A stretch of 27,073 bases of DNA, taken from assembly GCF_006345805.1 (NCBI RefSeq), contig NW_021827519.1:1-27073 (forward strand), in the 5' to 3' direction. Under the pieces are notes generated by a model that was given only the letters and a program-made list of their open reading frames with translations, did no database searches and was not told the DNA's origin. This stretch comes from Octopus sinensis (lineage: Eukaryota). The translations under genes and the position numbers were made by a program. Position 1 is the first letter of the stretch. Each line of letters begins with the position of its first letter. This document shows, piece by piece, positions 14,714-19,891 of this stretch.

Positions 14714-14722
14714 ACTTACCAT
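14714..14722 (-). promoter_or_regulatory. 5' splice donor of the giant exon
   Basis: ATG|GTAAGT consensus exactly where coding-like sequence gives way to (CA)n/(TA)n. Confidence 0.8.
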
Positions 14723-16185
14723 TCCTTTTTTCTGTATATTCGTTCCAGCACTCCTTTGAGTTCGCGGCTGGGCCGAGTCCACTGGCTGGCAGAATAATTG
14801 TACAACGACCAGCAGCACGAAGAGAAGGTATTTCGTCCAGGAACCGAACCCGCTTCCATGGTAATTAAAACTGGACGATTTCGAATTGGAAAGCCGGTTG
14901 AGTGTTAACATCGGGTTAGATTTGGAACATTGAATCCGCGGCGGCACTGTTGTGCTGGCGACTGGAAACGACGGAGATTTTGGTAAGTCTGACGGAGCTG
15001 TGCCTGTGGGGGATAACATTGCTTCTACTACAGGAGGTGGGGGTTGTGGTGATGAGGATGCTGATGATGATGATGGTGGTGGTGGTGGTGGTGGTGGTAG
15101 GGGTGATAATTCTGATGGTGTTTCTGCTGATGTTATTGAAGGTGGTGATGATGATGATGCTGTTGTTGATGATGAGGATGTTGATGATATTGATGATGAA
15201 GATGATGATGGAATCGGGGCAGATGATGAAGAAAGAGATGAAGGTAGCAGCAATGGCTTTATGTTGGTGTGGGACTTGTTGAGGGGCGACGAGTAAATAA
15301 GGGTGTATACACTAGAGGGAGACAGCTGGGTCCAACGCTGGCCGTGTGTAGTTGTCGACATGTTGATGGCTTCCCTTTCTGACAGTTTTGCCGAAGTCAA
15401 GAACTGTGGAGCGGCGGCTGAGCCGAAGCTGCTGCTGCTGCTGTTTGTAGTTGATGGAGGAGTCAGAGTAAGATGATGAAGGGAAGCAGCAGCGGCGGCG
15501 GCGTCAGTTGGCGGAGGTGGTGGTGGCGATGGTGGTAGTAGTAGCAGGGAAGAACAGCTGTCAGTAGGGGAGGCCGTCGGAGGATAACCCTCGCTCACAT
15601 CATCACCACAATCATCATCATCATCATCATCATCATCATATACTTCCACCTTATTGTTCTTCCTAATGTTGTTGTTTTTGTTGCTCGTGCTGGTTGCCGC
15701 CGTCATCGACCGAGAGGTGGCGCTGTTGGTGAAATCAGCTTTACGGTCTTCTAACTCTTGCCTTCTCCTCATCGCTGCTACTTTCTCATCTCTAATCTTG
15801 TTATTGCTATTGTTGCTGCTGCTGTTGTTGTTATTGTTAATGGTGGTGGTGTTGTTGTTGTTATTGTAGCAGTCCAAGTCGAGACCGAAGAACATCACCA
15901 TTTCGCTCGCTTCTTTCTCCATCCGAAACTCGCTTATTTCTACACAGTTTTTGCTGCTGTTCTTGTTGTTGTTGCTGTTGTTGTTGTTTCCTCGACAATC
16001 GCAGACTCTGTTATTATCGTCGATTTTACTTTTATCGCCGATCTCGTTTATCTTCTCGTCGTCAACGCGTTTTCTATCGCATCTTTTGATACTGCTGCTG
16101 CTGCTGTTGTTGCTGCTGCTGCCGTTATTGATGTTGTTGCGGTTCCTTGTTTTTGTTTGTTTCGTTCTAGTAGCAGTAGCAGTAG
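14720..16185 (-). CDS. Segment 3 of giant-exon ORF: Asn/Ser/Pro/Asp-rich, ending ...WTKYLLFVLLVVVQLFCQPVDSAQPRTQRSAGTNIQKKGM at a phase-0 donor
   Basis: The frame of the 430-aa ORF stays open upstream of its ATG to ~16206. It shows a hydrophobic stretch, an AxA-like site (VDS-A) and RTQR. The frame ends at ATG|GTAAGT. Confidence 0.7.
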
Positions 16186-17501
16186 AGTAGTAGTAGTAGT
16201 AAGTTCAGTGGTGACTGTAGTGTTAGGTTCAGCTGTGAAATTAGTTGTTTGTGTTAAAGTGTTATTAAACCCATCCCTAGATGTGCCATCATCATCACCA
16301 TCGTCATCATCGTCACCATCGCCGTCATCGTCAGCGTCATCGTCAGCGTGGTGGTCGTCATGTGCAGTGAAGAGGCTGTCGTCACAGTTGTTGGCAGGCA
16401 GCGCGGCTGCACCTCCATTGATGTTGTCTAAACAGGCTCGGTTACAATAGCAGCGAGGAGGAGGAGGAGGAGGAGGAGTGGTGTGTTGCTGGAGTCGATC
16501 GGGTTGTTGTGGTTTCGCTTCCACTTGGCATCGGCAATCCAAAGTTGTTACCTTTCTCATAGAAGGCGAAGAAGGGGAGGAGGTAACGACAGTGTTTCTG
16601 ACGGTGGTGTCGCTGTGGCTACGAAGAACCAGAGGACGGATAACGCCAGATGGATTACCACTGGAGTTCAGTGCTCTTACTACGACTACTACTACTACTA
16701 CTATTACCATCGCCGCCGCCACCACCACCACCACTACTTCTGCCACCACAGTTGTTGTTGTTGCCAACACTACAGCTGACTTGAAAGCCATTAACAACTG
16801 TTTTATATCCGACTCCTCTTCAGCAGTTTGTATCTTTTGTTTGTAGCCATGTTGTTGTGTTGTTGTGTCGTCGAAGTAATAATAATAATAGTAAAAGTAA
16901 TGGTGGTGGTAGTCATAACCTCGATCACTACAGAAGCGACCGTTAGTAGTAGTAGTAAGATAAGGTGGTGGTGGTGGAGCCAGTTTTTTGCTTTGGTGGG
17001 GAAAGGAGTAGTGAAAGGCTTTAATTACCAGCTTCACTGCAAGACTTCCTAATTCTGGTTGCCAGAGGCAGGAGGCTGAGGATGAAGATCTTTGTAGAGA
17101 ATATAATGGCAAAGATGGTTGTGCCAGGGGTGGCGCTGGTGTGGCTGCCGTCTCTGGCTGCCATCCTGAACACTGGGATCTTCTCAGTTTTGATGATGTC
17201 AGCATTTCTCTTCGAGTTTGGTCACTTTTAACTGGCAGCCATTTGTTCCTGTATTCTTCCCTGGAGATTCCACTTTGTGTAGTAAATTCTTCGACCATTC
17301 CCTTTCTTTGTCTATTCCATTTTAGTTCTGCCAGCACTTTTTTTGTCTCTTCTATCCCACCCTTTGTCTCATCTACCCGTTTAAACTTCACAAACAACAC
17401 TTTTCCACTAAACAACTCACCACAACTTTCATCATCGCCTAACGTTTCCCTTTTCAACATTTTTCTCCGACAGCGCGCTTTTTCTGCTCTGCTGCTGCTG
17501 C

Positions 17502-17565
<64 letters not shown>

Positions 17566-18219
17566 TGCAGCTGTGGTCATGGTGGTGGTGGTGGTGACGA
17601 TATTTCTATTAATATTATCGTCTGCTTTTATAAGTGTCAAAGAGTGAGTCGGTTTACCATCAGCGACGTCTCGGTCGCCTTTGCCGCTGTTCATGTGGCT
17701 TCTGTTGCAATAGCCATCAGATCGAGATAACGTATTCGAGCTCTCTTCATGCGTATCCCATATCTCGGAAGCAATGGTCAGAGCCGGACCCATAATACCA
17801 TTTACAATGACACCGCTATCTCTACTTACTATGATTCTGTCTTCAGAATCAAGCTTACCAATGTCCGATTCTTGCAGCATCTGGTCGTCAAAGAAGAGAA
17901 CTCTATGATGACCTGAAAGATACAAATGTTTGTTGGTGATATGTAAGTGACAATGATCATGATGAAGAGGATGATAAAGACGAGGAGGATGAAGAGGTAG
18001 ATGATAATTATGATGATGGTGAAGACGATAAAAACGTGAATGCCAACTTTGTGGAGAATTAACTATTTTAATCTCATCATTTGGTCCGTTTTTACCAATC
18101 ATTGTCCAGACATTGAACATTGCAGCTTTAGGTTCCATTGTTCCGTCAATTGCAGCGATCGGATCGATTAATCTTCCTGTTTTTGGTGCTATTTTCTTCG
18201 GCAAAGAAGCCAACTGAGG
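16186..18219 (-). CDS. Segment 2 of giant-exon ORF (same frame as segment 1): low-complexity protein with poly-N, poly-D, His-rich and Pro tracts
   Basis: 721-codon ORF starting 2 codons after the TAG in the same frame, including ~400 codons of largely non-repetitive open sequence (17000-18200). Dinucleotide microsatellites are absent, unlike the flanks. Confidence 0.65.
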
Positions 18220-19497
18220 CTAAGGTGGAGACGACGATGGAGGCGTTGAGGTCGGGGAAGTCAACAAGGAAGTTGGCGGCGGCGGTGGTGGTGTTGTTGG
18301 TGGTGGCGGTGTTGGTGGAGGTGCTGTAGGCAACGGAGATAATGGAATTTCAGAGGCGAGTGAAGAAGGAGGCGGGTAGAGTGAAGAGGGAGAGATAGAT
18401 GAAGGTGATCCCGGAGAAGAAGAAGCAGACGAAGAGAAAAACCCCGAAGAGGAAACATTGAAAGTTGGTAAGAGCATGCGTGACAGGATGTTGTTGGTTC
18501 TAAAGCGTTGATTTATTGCTTTTGGCGAAGATGGCGCTTTCTCTGATTGCTGGGTCGAGTTCAAAACAGGCACAACGAGTGGAGTATTGGAGCGAAGCGA
18601 CGAAGTGACTTGTTGAAGTTGTTGTTTCTGCGGTTTTGGTGAGTCGTCGGTCGGTATAGGTGTTCCATCATCGCTTCGTAGAGTTGAATTTGTGTTGGAG
18701 TCAGAAGCAATCACCTTCAAAGCATGAGTCAGTTGATAATCGAAAGAGCGTCGTTGATCAATTGATGAAGCGTGTGTGGCGTCAGGCAGAGCGGAGGAAG
18801 TTGTTGGCGGTGTCGGTTGGTGTCCGAGTGAAGGAGCATGTTCCGGGGGTTCGCCTTTAACTGCTGTGTCAGAAGATGGCAAGAATGCAGGAAAGCAAGA
18901 AGACATTGTCTGCGACGATGCCGAGCCGGTTGTTTCGAGTGACGGATGAGATGATGGAGATATCAACGAAGAAGACATTGATAAAGGCATTGATGGCGGC
19001 GACGTGGTTGACGGAGTCGCAGGAGAATTCAACGAGAACGACGAAGGACATGGACTTGACCTTGATGTCAAAGTTGATGAGGTGAAAGTTGACGAAGTTT
19101 TCTTATCGATCGAGACTAGTTGCGATAGTGACGGAGGTTTCCGCTTGCTGAGGGGTAATGTTGGAGAAGGCGCGGCTAAAAGCGTTGCTGACTCCTGAAT
19201 TGAGGCCCCGGTTGATGGACGGGACGCGGATTCCGCATCGCTATGAGCTGACCCCGAATCACCAGTCGGGTTTTCAAGGACACTTGAGGAAGATACTGAG
19301 TCACGCCCAGAATCAGAACCAGGTTCCTGCTTACCCAAATTCTTCACTTGCATTTCACACTTGGAATCCTGTTTAAACTCCTCTTCCGCTCTATAATCGA
19401 CTTTCAGTGTTACAGTCACAGCCCCTTCATCGACCAATTCGCCGACGCTATTTTCGGTTGCCGTGGAAACCGTCCGATCTAGACAGGAGGACGCCAT
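18220..19497 (-). CDS. Segment 1 of giant-exon ORF: 425-aa Ser/Pro/Thr-rich disordered N-terminus, ends at an in-frame TAG
   Basis: ATG in aagATGg context. Upstream in-frame TAG at 19531-19533. No ATG in the 394 nt between the acceptor and this ATG. Long open frame with only triplet-type repeats. Product not recognised. Confidence 0.7.
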   Translation of the reverse strand: MASSCLDRTVSTATENSVGELVDEGAVTVTLKVDYRAEEEFKQDSKCEMQVKNLGKQEPGSDSGRDSVSSSSVLENPTGDSGSAHSDAESASRPSTGASIQESATLLAAPSPTLPLSKRKPPSLSQLVSIDKKTSSTFTSSTLTSRSSPCPSSFSLNSPATPSTTSPPSMPLSMSSSLISPSSHPSLETTGSASSQTMSSCFPAFLPSSDTAVKGEPPEHAPSLGHQPTPPTTSSALPDATHASSIDQRRSFDYQLTHALKVIASDSNTNSTLRSDDGTPIPTDDSPKPQKQQLQQVTSSLRSNTPLVVPVLNSTQQSEKAPSSPKAINQRFRTNNILSRMLLPTFNVSSSGFFSSSASSSPGSPSSISPSSLYPPPSSLASEIPLSPLPTAPPPTPPPPTTPPPPPPTSLLTSPTSTPPSSSPP

Positions 19498-19891
19498 CTT
19501 TTCGAGCCGCTGGGTTTTGCTCAGATTGAACTACTGGAAGAGAATTATTCTGTTATCCTTTCGTACCCCTGCCCAAACCAAACTTCCCTATTTTCTTTAT
19601 TCCACCCCTTTTTATCTCACAATGTCTTATTACAGTTTTTGTTGTTAGCGTTGTAGTTTTTATTTTTTTCTTCGGTTTTTCTGTCTGTCTTTTTTTTTTT
19701 ATATATATATTGTCGTTTCCCTAAATTTCAGGTTTTAGTCTTTCGATGACTGGTTGTGAGAATGGATGATGTGGTTGATAAGATCGCCAATCAAACGAGG
19801 TGCTCTACAGTCTTCCCCTCCTCCTCTTCGATCACCTCCAATAACTAACAGAAAATCACTTCTTCCCTCTTTGATGTTTAAAAGGATTTTT
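19498..19891 (-). other. 5' UTR portion of the giant exon, free of upstream AUGs
   Basis: No CAT on the plus strand in 19498-19891. Bounded by the acceptor and the Kozak ATG. Confidence 0.6.

What the first reader, a model, noticed from the sequence alone, without database searches (positions are those of the whole stretch)
18205..18240. Lone in-frame UAG separating 425 and >670 open codons: nonsense change, A-to-I recoding, readthrough or exitron
Seen: CCA CCT TAG CCT CAG TTG; both sides are long and open in the same frame. Hypotheses: (a) CAG to TAG in a CCTCAG-CCTCAG duplication (error or null allele; most parsimonious); (b) UAG is the preferred ADAR triplet and coleoids recode extensively, so UIG (Trp) would give an editing-controlled long isoform; (c) leaky stop, since +4 is C; (d) the TAG is itself an acceptor (ctccaccttAG|) and a phase-0 donor AAG|GTGATT at 18715/18714 would remove a 495-nt intron in frame.
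Basis: partly seen in the sequence, partly recalled or inferred. Interest (0 to 1): 0.7.

Follow-up and report, generated by a model that had tools for sequence, protein, structure and literature searches.

The report
Conserved in-frame stop between two octopus ORFs
The lone TAG is a real stop codon, present in four octopus genomes, that ends a well-conserved 425-codon gene part and is followed in the same frame by a 1,200-codon stretch that selection keeps open, so the stop is probably bypassed or skipped in some messages, but the route cannot be told from DNA alone.

Summary
On the minus strand, ATG 19497 opens 425 codons, TAG lies at 18222-18220, and 723 further codons are open in the same frame.

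The TAG is not an assembly error or a private null allele. It is present, inside a 61-nt invariant block, in O. sinensis (this window), O. vulgaris, O. bimaculoides and a fourth octopus assembly.

- **ORF1** is ordinary constrained coding sequence (dN/dS 0.27, against 1.2-1.3 in the shifted frames).
- **ORF2** runs 1,244 and 1,184 codons in the two other species. It shows no amino-acid constraint (0.68, like the shifted frames) but is kept open. It has 0 stops against 61 and 122 in the other frames. Of the 35 indel events inside the exon, 34 are multiples of 3 and one is a compensated 2+1 pair. Random placement of the observed substitutions gives 7.6 expected stops (none in 1 of 5,000 trials).

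Both ORFs lie in one roughly 5.2-kb exon, and three annotations split them into two genes.

My best reading (0.55) is that ORF1 and ORF2 are joined by bypassing the UAG, through editing, readthrough or an in-frame exitron. The main rival (0.3) is that ORF2 starts at its own AUG, 82 nt downstream. No RNA data were within reach. The gene has no homologues outside Octopus and no known domains.

The parts
14720..19891 (-). One large exon (about 5.2 kb) that holds the leader, ORF1, the TAG and ORF2. The acceptor is ttctttccAG|AAAAATCC, so the exon starts at 19891. The donor is AATG|GTAAGT, so the exon ends at 14720.
   Evidence: Sequence read. The RefSeq protein XP_036354541.1 maps up to 14720. The four-genome alignment is colinear across the acceptor. 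The boundaries are inferred from motifs and annotation, not from RNA.
19498..19891 (-). Non-coding 5' leader of the exon.
   Evidence: There is an in-frame stop 12 codons before the ATG. Indels between species here are 2, 13, 1, 12, 2 and 14 nt, so they are not restricted to multiples of 3. This serves as an internal control for the indel test on ORF2.
18223..19497 (-). ORF1: 425 codons encoding a Ser/Pro/Thr-rich protein (MASSCLDR...PPSSSPP).
   Evidence: It is identical to CAI9740472.1 of O. vulgaris and 92% identical to XP_014768490.2 of O. bimaculoides. NG86 dN/dS is 0.27 in frame against 1.23 and 1.28 in the shifted frames, and 0.17 over the last 100 codons.
18220..18222 (-). The in-frame TAG, followed by C.
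   Evidence: It is conserved in four assemblies and lies inside a 61-nt invariant run (18255-18195). That run is the second longest in a 1,548-column alignment in which 11.4% of columns vary.
18139..18219 (-). A 27-codon interval between the TAG and the next ATG. It is open in frame in all four genomes and is locally the most variable stretch.
   Evidence: The other two frames of this interval contain stop codons (read by hand from the sequence, not counted by a tool). There are too few substitutions for a coding test (2 synonymous, 4 non-synonymous).
14720..18138 (-). ORF2, starting at ATG 18138 (MEPKAAMFNVW..., context ACAATGG). It encodes low-complexity, mucin-like sequence. In this assembly the frame is broken at about 16186 and continues in frame -1 (16204-14633).
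   Evidence: Open frames are shown. dN/dS is 0.68 in frame against 0.74 and 0.67 shifted. Stops per frame are 0, 61 and 122. Neutral placement of the observed substitutions predicts 7.6 new stops, with none in 1 of 5,000 simulations. Of 35 indel events inside the exon, 34 are multiples of 3 and one is a compensated 2+1 pair, and about 20 of the 34 are not simple tandem slippage.
18709..18717 (-). Candidate exitron donor AAG|GTGATT, in phase 0.
   Evidence: It is the top-scoring of 93 GT sites in 19890-17600 using an approximate consensus matrix written from memory. It lies within a 38-nt invariant run, 18729-18692.
18214..18262 (-). Candidate 3' splice region: TTGAC branch-like motif at -41, a C-rich pyrimidine tract, then TAG| (18220) and CAG| (18214), both in phase 0.
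   Evidence: The acceptor scores rank 8th and 5th of 113 AG sites. The sequence is invariant in four genomes. This is motif evidence only.
18027..18096 (-). Predicted 70-nt RNA hairpin, 125-195 nt 3' of the UAG, within the first codons of ORF2.
   Evidence: MFE is -17.3 kcal/mol, z = -2.7, with 3 of 200 shuffles as stable. It is present in the consensus fold, and its one substitution falls in a bulge. Only 1 of 42 amino-acid-invariant codons here varies synonymously, against 20% in ORF1.
16160..16190 (-). Frameshift specific to this assembly: 25 nt missing from an (ACT)n run.
   Evidence: Alignment with O. vulgaris and O. bimaculoides. O. bimaculoides lacks 21 nt at the same place and stays in frame.

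Best explanation
The locus is one transcription unit whose large exon carries two consecutive in-frame reading frames separated by a genuine, conserved UAG.

Shown:
- The UAG is the real terminator of a constrained 425-codon ORF1.
- The frame behind it (at least 1,184 codons) is kept free of stops and frameshifts by selection, so it is translated. Its amino-acid sequence evolves almost freely, as expected for a disordered, mucin-like spacer.

Inferred:
- In a fraction of messages or ribosomes the UAG is bypassed, so the locus makes a short ORF1 protein and a long ORF1-ORF2 fusion.
- Of the possible routes, I rank recoding of the UAG first (about 0.3 to 0.35 together). This means either A-to-I editing to UIG, read as Trp, or near-cognate readthrough of UAG-C.
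- I rank in-frame removal of a 495-nt exitron second (about 0.2 to 0.25). It would run from donor 18714 to the acceptor formed by the AG of the TAG itself.
For: The TAG and 61 nt around it are identical in four octopus assemblies. ORF1 has a coding signature and ORF2 does not, with the change at the TAG. ORF2 is nonetheless kept open. It has 0 stops against 61 and 122 in the other frames. Neutral placement of substitutions predicts 7.6 stops, with none in 1 of 5,000 trials. Inside ORF2, 34 of 35 indel events are multiples of 3 and one is a compensated pair, while the leader and intron show non-3n indels.

ORF2 is in the same frame as ORF1 and the 27 codons between them are open. I estimate about 0.07 for this by chance (1/3 for the frame times about 0.2 for openness, judged by hand from the stops in the interval's other two frames). 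The two ORFs are only 82 nt apart in a 2.7-Gb genome and lie within one exon.

The kind of event is known. Stop-loss UAG-to-UGG editing that joins adjacent ORFs is handled explicitly in coleoid transcriptomes (PMC8382921). ORF1-stop-ORF2 readthrough is known for Drosophila kelch. Readthrough regions are less constrained than other coding sequence and have conserved stop codons (PMC5100048).

For the exitron route, the donor is the best GT in the exon, is in phase 0 and is invariant. The acceptor is in phase, with a pyrimidine tract and a branch-like motif.
Against: No RNA, ribosome or protein data were available. A junction query with Trp at the stop found no read-through protein in 5.8 billion sequences.

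The UAG is not in a convincing duplex. The local fold gives z = +0.7 and -0.4, the A pairs only in a 4-bp stem, and the best long-range partner is matched or beaten by 20% of control targets. No known readthrough motif follows the stop (CCU CAG is not CARYYA or CUAG; from my own knowledge). Abundant readthrough has been reported only in insects and crustaceans.

The first in-frame AUG after the stop has a strong context (ACAATGG). Conservation rises sharply exactly there, while the interval before it varies at the neutral rate. That fits an independent start of ORF2. All three annotations model two genes.
Confidence: 0.55

Rival explanations
1. Two products without fusion. ORF1 always ends at the TAG. 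ORF2 is translated from its own AUG at 18138 on an alternative message, in which an upstream exon is spliced to the TAG|/CAG| acceptor or transcription starts inside the exon. The shared frame would then be a coincidence.
For: The AUG has a strong context (A at -3, G at +4) that is conserved in four genomes, and no AUG in any frame lies in the 317 nt before it. The interval between TAG and AUG varies at the neutral rate, and conservation jumps at the AUG. An acceptor-like motif sits at the TAG. RefSeq for O. sinensis and the gene tables held for O. bimaculoides and O. vulgaris all start a second gene at this AUG. An older O. bimaculoides model shows that alternative 5' exons splice into this exon.
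Against: The same frame plus an open 27-codon interval has only about a 0.07 chance if the ORFs are unrelated (my hand estimate). The AUG-free stretch is not significant (P = 0.08). Gene predictors must split a gene at any in-frame stop, so the annotations are not independent evidence. No promoter or junction evidence exists.
Confidence: 0.3
2. Sequencing or assembly error, or a null allele private to this individual, with CAG misread or mutated to TAG.
For: The motif CCT TAG CCT CAG looks like a CCTCAG duplication. This assembly does carry probable indel errors nearby.
Against: The TAG is present in four independent assemblies of at least three species, and all ORF1 proteins end at the same residue. 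The evolutionary regime changes exactly at the TAG.
Confidence: 0.02
3. An old nonsense mutation fixed in the Octopus ancestor. ORF2 would be a decaying, untranslated relic, in effect a 3'UTR.
For: ORF2 shows no amino-acid constraint (dN/dS 0.68, the same as the shifted frames) and diverges about as fast as the flanking introns.
Against: The 287 substitutions and 35 indel events between O. vulgaris and O. bimaculoides have produced no stop and no net frameshift. Non-3n indels appear immediately outside the exon.
Confidence: 0.03
4. A retroelement-type gag-UAG-pol unit or another mobile-element ORF pair.
For: Two long ORFs separated by one UAG is the layout of such units.
Against: There are no Pfam domains of any kind in ORF1, ORF2 or the shifted continuation. 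The locus is single-copy in the genome by DNA search. It is syntenic in three species.
Confidence: 0.01

Closest known systems
Drosophila kelch (and headcase): ORF1-stop-ORF2 genes expressed by programmed stop-codon readthrough
   Same: Two long reading frames lie in one frame in one message, separated by a single conserved stop. A short product and a much longer fusion (77 and 160 kDa for kelch) are both made. The extension is less constrained than the first ORF, and a conserved RNA stem-loop lies 3' of the stop.
   Different: kelch uses UGA, whereas here the stop is UAG-C. The candidate hairpin here lies 125-195 nt downstream rather than close to the stop. The organism is a mollusc, where abundant readthrough has not been reported. 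Nothing has been shown experimentally here.
Coleoid A-to-I stop-loss recoding (UAG to UIG, read as Trp) that joins adjacent ORFs
   Same: The animal is a coleoid cephalopod. UAG is the triplet ADAR prefers (my own knowledge). The case of two adjacent ORFs separated by an editable stop is treated as one long ORF in published editome pipelines (PMC8382921). Synonymous variation is reduced around the site.
   Different: There is no RNA evidence for editing at this A, and no significant duplex around it. The gene has no Swiss-Prot-like homologue, so it would have been excluded from those published sets.
Exitrons (alternatively spliced in-frame introns inside coding exons; my own knowledge of Marquez et al. 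2015)
   Same: It has GT...AG borders inside a large coding exon, a length that is a multiple of 3 (495 nt), retained sequence that is itself coding, and a disordered protein region.
   Different: Here the acceptor AG would be the last two bases of the stop codon. Splicing would therefore unlock a 1,200-codon downstream frame instead of just deleting residues. The acceptor is weak and no junction reads are known.

Membership tests
Programmed stop-codon readthrough gene | The in-frame stop codon is conserved across species | tested here: met
   TAG is identical in four octopus assemblies. The 61 nt around it are also invariant, so the codon itself adds little extra information.
Programmed stop-codon readthrough gene | The region between the first and second stop evolves as coding sequence | tested here: inconclusive
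   The frame is kept open: 0 stops, only 3n indels, and 1 of 5,000 in simulation. The codon-substitution signature is absent, with dN/dS 0.68 against 0.74 and 0.67 off frame.
Programmed stop-codon readthrough gene | A leaky stop context or a stimulatory 3' RNA structure | tested here: inconclusive
   The base after the stop is C. No CARYYA or CUAG motif follows. The first 106 nt after the stop are not structured (z = +1.45). A hairpin at +125 to +195 gives z = -2.7.
Programmed stop-codon readthrough gene | Ribosome footprints or peptides across the stop | not testable with these tools
   No Ribo-seq or proteomic data are held.
Coleoid A-to-I stop-loss editing site | A genomic adenosine in an editable stop (UAG or UGA) | tested here: met
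   UAG, with the A at window 18221.
Coleoid A-to-I stop-loss editing site | The site is embedded in double-stranded RNA | tested here: inconclusive
   Folds of the surrounding 86 and 300 nt are not more stable than shuffles (z = -0.44 and +0.70). The A pairs mainly in a 4-bp stem (P about 0.5). In the best long-range duplex (-43 kcal/mol, to the (GUG/GCG)n region at about 16750) the A sits in an internal loop, and that duplex is matched by 20% of control targets. A distant partner cannot be excluded.
Coleoid A-to-I stop-loss editing site | An A/G difference between DNA and RNA at the site | not testable with these tools
   No RNA reads are available. A protein query with Trp at the stop found nothing spanning the junction.
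Exitron | GT-AG borders inside a coding exon and a length that is a multiple of 3 | tested here: met
   GT at 18714-18713 and AG at 18221-18220, giving 495 nt, with both sites in phase 0.
Exitron | The retained sequence is itself protein-coding | tested here: met
   dN/dS is 0.17 to 0.27 for the last third of ORF1.
Exitron | Usable splice signals and observed junctions | tested here: inconclusive
   The donor ranks 1st of 93 and the acceptors rank 8th and 5th of 113, using a rough matrix written from memory. Both regions are invariant. Junction reads are not testable.
Two independent adjacent genes (as annotated) | Own start codon in a good context | tested here: met
   ACAATGG is conserved, and there is no upstream AUG for 317 nt.
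Two independent adjacent genes (as annotated) | Separate transcripts or promoters | not testable with these tools
   No transcript-end data are held. The ORFs are 82 nt apart within one predicted exon.
Assembly error / private null allele | The stop is absent from other individuals and species | tested here: not met
   The stop is present in all four assemblies.

The most novel reading that the evidence does not exclude
The UAG is a conserved recoding switch, worked by A-to-I editing to Trp or by regulated readthrough. It decides whether an Octopus-specific gene yields a 425-residue protein or a fusion at least 1,600 residues long. That would be among the longest recoding-dependent extensions known in animals. 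Its tail would be selected only for being translated, not for its sequence.
Probability: 0.3. Interest if true: 0.7.

Novelty: new member of a known kind. Interest (0 to 1): 0.45.

Why it matters
If the bypass is real, three public octopus annotations split one gene into two, and the locus would be a clean natural test case for how coleoids get past a stop codon. It has a single conserved UAG, a constrained first ORF, and a very long second ORF whose only detectable constraint is to stay open. It would allow editing, readthrough and exitron splicing to be told apart with one amplicon. It would also show whether a stop-loss event can control the production of a mucin-like tail more than 1,200 residues long. 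If ORF2 instead starts on its own, the locus is a curiosity of annotation: two in-frame ORFs in one exon.

Tried and rejected
**Retroelement gag-UAG-pol.** Pfam found no domains in any of the three frames, so I rejected this.

**Homologues outside Octopus that might show a sense codon at the stop.**
- A full scan of 1.84 billion representative proteins with the read-through protein gave only ORF1, the RefSeq ORF2 model and three poly-Asn chance hits.
- A word-based search with O. vulgaris ORF2 found nothing, probably because low-complexity words swamped it.
- The query with Trp at the stop found only the three ORF1 proteins.

**Paralogues or a second allele in the same genome.**
- The first DNA search found only the window itself plus short (CCN)n hits.
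- Later searches failed because the shared daily limit was reached.

**Editing site lists in papers.**
- The chromosome-scale paper analyses squid, not octopus.
- Published octopus editomes are restricted to ORFs with Swiss-Prot similarity.
- The Logan run accession appears in no paper.

**RNA structure around the UAG.** Nothing significant was found.

**Other tests.**
- The AUG-free leader test was not significant (P = 0.08).
- The Logan contig looks genomic, because it carries the intronic (AC)n repeat. It therefore says nothing about RNA.
- Exact look-up of the RefSeq ORF2 protein found no contig on record.
Full report
**The observation**

The plus strand at 18205-18240 contains ...ctgaggctaaggtgg.... 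The gene is therefore on the minus strand and reads CCA CCT TAG CCT CAG TTG, with the TAG at 18222-18220. Stop-to-stop ORF listing and translation show three things. There are 425 codons from ATG 19497 to the TAG. There are 723 further open codons in the same frame, down to 16051. A 524-codon frame (16204-14633) then overlaps the end of the second stretch in another phase.

**Where the window comes from**

The window is a whole 27,073-nt unplaced contig of a 2.72-Gb genome. The RefSeq protein XP_036354541.1 of Octopus sinensis is recorded on a contig of exactly this length, so the animal is O. sinensis. The contig is colinear with chromosome OX597838.1 of O. vulgaris, at about 96% identity over more than 15 kb. 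It is also colinear with CM046625.1 of O. bimaculoides.

**The TAG is not an error**

ORF1 is identical to the O. vulgaris protein CAI9740472.1. It is 92% identical to O. bimaculoides XP_014768490.2 and 85% identical to a protein from a Logan assembly of run SRR11869394. All of them end at ...PPSSSPP.

The DNA alignment shows TAG in all four assemblies. It lies in a 61-nt run (18255-18195) without a single difference. That is the second-longest invariant run in a 1,548-column alignment in which 11.4% of columns vary. The Logan contig carries the intronic (AC)n repeat, so it is genomic and gives no RNA information.

**What lies on each side of the TAG**

Comparing O. vulgaris with O. bimaculoides, ORF1 behaves as ordinary coding sequence. 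Third codon positions change most (18, 15 and 41 changes at positions 1, 2 and 3). The Nei-Gojobori dN/dS is 0.27 in frame but 1.23 and 1.28 in the shifted frames, and it is 0.17 over the last 100 codons.

Behind the TAG, the same frame is open for 1,244 codons in O. vulgaris and 1,184 in O. bimaculoides. This ORF2 shows no amino-acid constraint. Changes are spread evenly over the codon positions (87, 92 and 89). dN/dS is 0.68 in frame against 0.74 and 0.67 off frame. Its divergence is close to that of the neighbouring intron.

ORF2 is nevertheless clearly kept open:
- It has 0 stops, against 61 and 122 in the other two sense frames.
- Placing the 287 observed substitutions at random, with the same spectrum, creates 7.6 stops on average, and none in only 1 of 5,000 trials.
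- Of the 35 indel events inside the exon, 34 are multiples of 3 and the other is a compensated 2+1 pair within 14 nt.
- About 20 of the 3n events are not simple tandem slippage.
- Non-3n indels appear at once in the intron after the exon, and in the leader before ORF1, where they are 2, 13, 1, 12, 2 and 14 nt.

ORF2 is therefore translated. Selection acts on its being read through rather than on its sequence. This is the pattern expected of a disordered spacer. The sequence is poly-Asn, Thr, Asp, Pro and Ser rich, and its only Pfam match is a weak one, below the curated cut-off, to the Mucin-like glycoprotein family PF01456.

**Gene anatomy**

A pyrimidine tract and CAG at 19893-19892 mark the likely start of the exon at 19891. 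AATG|GTAAGT marks its end at 14720, which is where the RefSeq protein stops matching. One exon of about 5.2 kb thus holds a 394-nt leader, ORF1, the TAG, a 27-codon interval, and ORF2 from ATG 18138 onward.

In this assembly only, 25 nt of an (ACT)n run are missing at about 16186. O. bimaculoides lacks 21 nt at the same place and stays in frame. Three single-A losses in an (AAC)n run nearby look like the same kind of long-read error.

The RefSeq model (578 residues, starting MEPK...) bridges the shift with in-frame introns. The gene tables held for O. vulgaris and O. bimaculoides, and RefSeq for O. sinensis, all split the locus into an ORF1 gene and a second gene beginning at the AUG 82 nt after the stop. 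That is what any gene predictor must do at an in-frame stop.

No homologue exists outside Octopus. A scan of 1.84 billion representative proteins returned only these models, and no Pfam domain is present. A retroelement gag-pol reading is therefore excluded.

**How ORF2 gets translated**

Two independent genes 82 nt apart inside one exon of a gene-poor 2.7-Gb genome is unlikely in itself.

Evidence for fusion with ORF1:
- The frames agree, which has a 1/3 chance.
- The 27 intervening codons are open, although the other two frames of that interval contain stops. I estimate roughly 0.2 for this by hand, which gives about 0.07 jointly.

Evidence for an independent start of ORF2:
- The first in-frame AUG has a strong, conserved context (ACAATGG).
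- No AUG in any frame lies in the 317 nt before it, although this is not significant (P = 0.08).
- The interval before it varies at the neutral rate.
- Conservation jumps at the AUG. Only 1 of 42 amino-acid-invariant codons varies synonymously there, against 20% in ORF1, which I calculate as p of about 0.001.

These two lines of evidence roughly cancel. I put fusion at about 0.55 and independent initiation at about 0.3.

**The routes to fusion**

*Editing.* UAG is the triplet ADAR prefers, and stop-loss UAG-to-UGG events joining adjacent ORFs are known in coleoids (PMC8382921). However, the UAG is not in a significant duplex:
- The folds give z = +0.7 and -0.44.
- The A pairs mainly in a 4-bp stem.
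- The consensus fold offers a 12-bp interrupted stem with no compensatory change.
- The best long-range partner, the (GUG/GCG)n tract at about 16750, leaves the A in an internal loop and is matched by 20% of controls.

*Readthrough.* The C after the stop and the conserved stop codon fit. So does a low-constraint extension, as described for insects and for Drosophila kelch. However, no known motif follows the stop and the first 106 nt are unstructured. The one candidate element is a 70-nt hairpin at 18096-18027. It gives z = -2.7, and it is invariant apart from one change in a bulge. It lies 125-195 nt downstream of the stop.

*Exitron.* AAG|GTGATT is the best of 93 GT sites in the exon, using a rough consensus matrix that I wrote from memory. 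It is in phase 0 and lies in a 38-nt invariant run. The TAG| and CAG| acceptors rank 8th and 5th of 113 AG sites, with a C-rich tract and a TTGAC motif at -41. The 495 nt removed are translated in at least one isoform (dN/dS 0.17 to 0.27), so this could only be an alternative event.

None of these routes can be decided without RNA or protein data. A database query with Trp at the stop found no spanning protein.

**Verdict**

This is a conserved, functional stop codon between a constrained ORF and a very long ORF that is kept open in the same frame. It is currently annotated as two genes.

In kind it matches known phenomena: readthrough of the kelch type, coleoid stop-loss editing, or exitrons. 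At most it is a new member of a known kind. It is of moderate interest until RNA data show which route, if any, is used.

Noticed in passing
window 16160-16190 and 16851-16867 (minus strand): This assembly lacks 25 nt of an (ACT)n run that O. vulgaris has, which shifts ORF2 by one base. Three single-A losses in an (AAC)n run nearby net to 3 nt. Both look like long-read indel errors in an unplaced scaffold. The RefSeq model XP_036354541.1 bridges the shift with in-frame introns.
   Followed up: partly
window 18027-18138 (minus strand): The first roughly 47 codons of ORF2 are almost invariant even at synonymous sites (1 of 42 variable, against 20% in ORF1). They contain a predicted 70-nt hairpin (z = -2.7) with an ATTAAA at 18072-18067 in its apical part. 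This points to an RNA-level element of unknown role, such as a structure, a splice regulator or a poly(A) site.
   Followed up: partly
window 19498-19891; L012 1-9763: The O. vulgaris gene table lists a 106-residue gene whose last coding piece would end at about window 19735, inside the leader of the ORF1 exon. Indels there are not multiples of 3 between species, so that call is doubtful.
   Followed up: partly
window 24970-24689, 22997-22799, 20761-20588, 11853-11565, 11362-11201, 8601-8438, 5013-4818, 4331-4035, 1416-1247: An interspersed repeat family of about 150-290 nt, at 70-92% identity, has at least nine copies in the window. Copies also occur in the O. vulgaris and O. bimaculoides loci.
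   Followed up: no
window 14458-14309, 13200-12515, 12041-11893, 11194-10500, 10009-9560: Blocks at least 94% identical to O. bimaculoides lie downstream of the big exon, against a background median of 72 matching columns per 100. None of the ORFs tested there had a Pfam hit. They may be further exons, UTR or regulatory sequence. The O. vulgaris model (1,690 residues) continues beyond the DNA fetched.
   Followed up: partly
window 15755-16450 and 17015-17647 (plus strand): Antisense ORFs of 231 and 210 codons overlap ORF2, where triplet-repeat sequence is common. I saw nothing to suggest they are genes, but I did not test them.
   Followed up: no
window 16708-16757 versus 18262-18311: The (CCN)n tract coding for poly-Pro/Thr just upstream of the TAG is about 70% complementary to the (GUG/GCG)n tract coding for poly-Val/Ala 1.5 kb downstream. 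This could form a long-range duplex, but it is no better than what control segments find.
   Followed up: partly
L009 / L013 (O. bimaculoides), start of ORF1: The O. bimaculoides slice aligned across this locus contains 110 N characters. The current RefSeq protein there starts at Met49, and the older model used a different first exon spliced in at codon 8-9 (acceptor CTGTCTAG|AT at window 19479).
   Followed up: no
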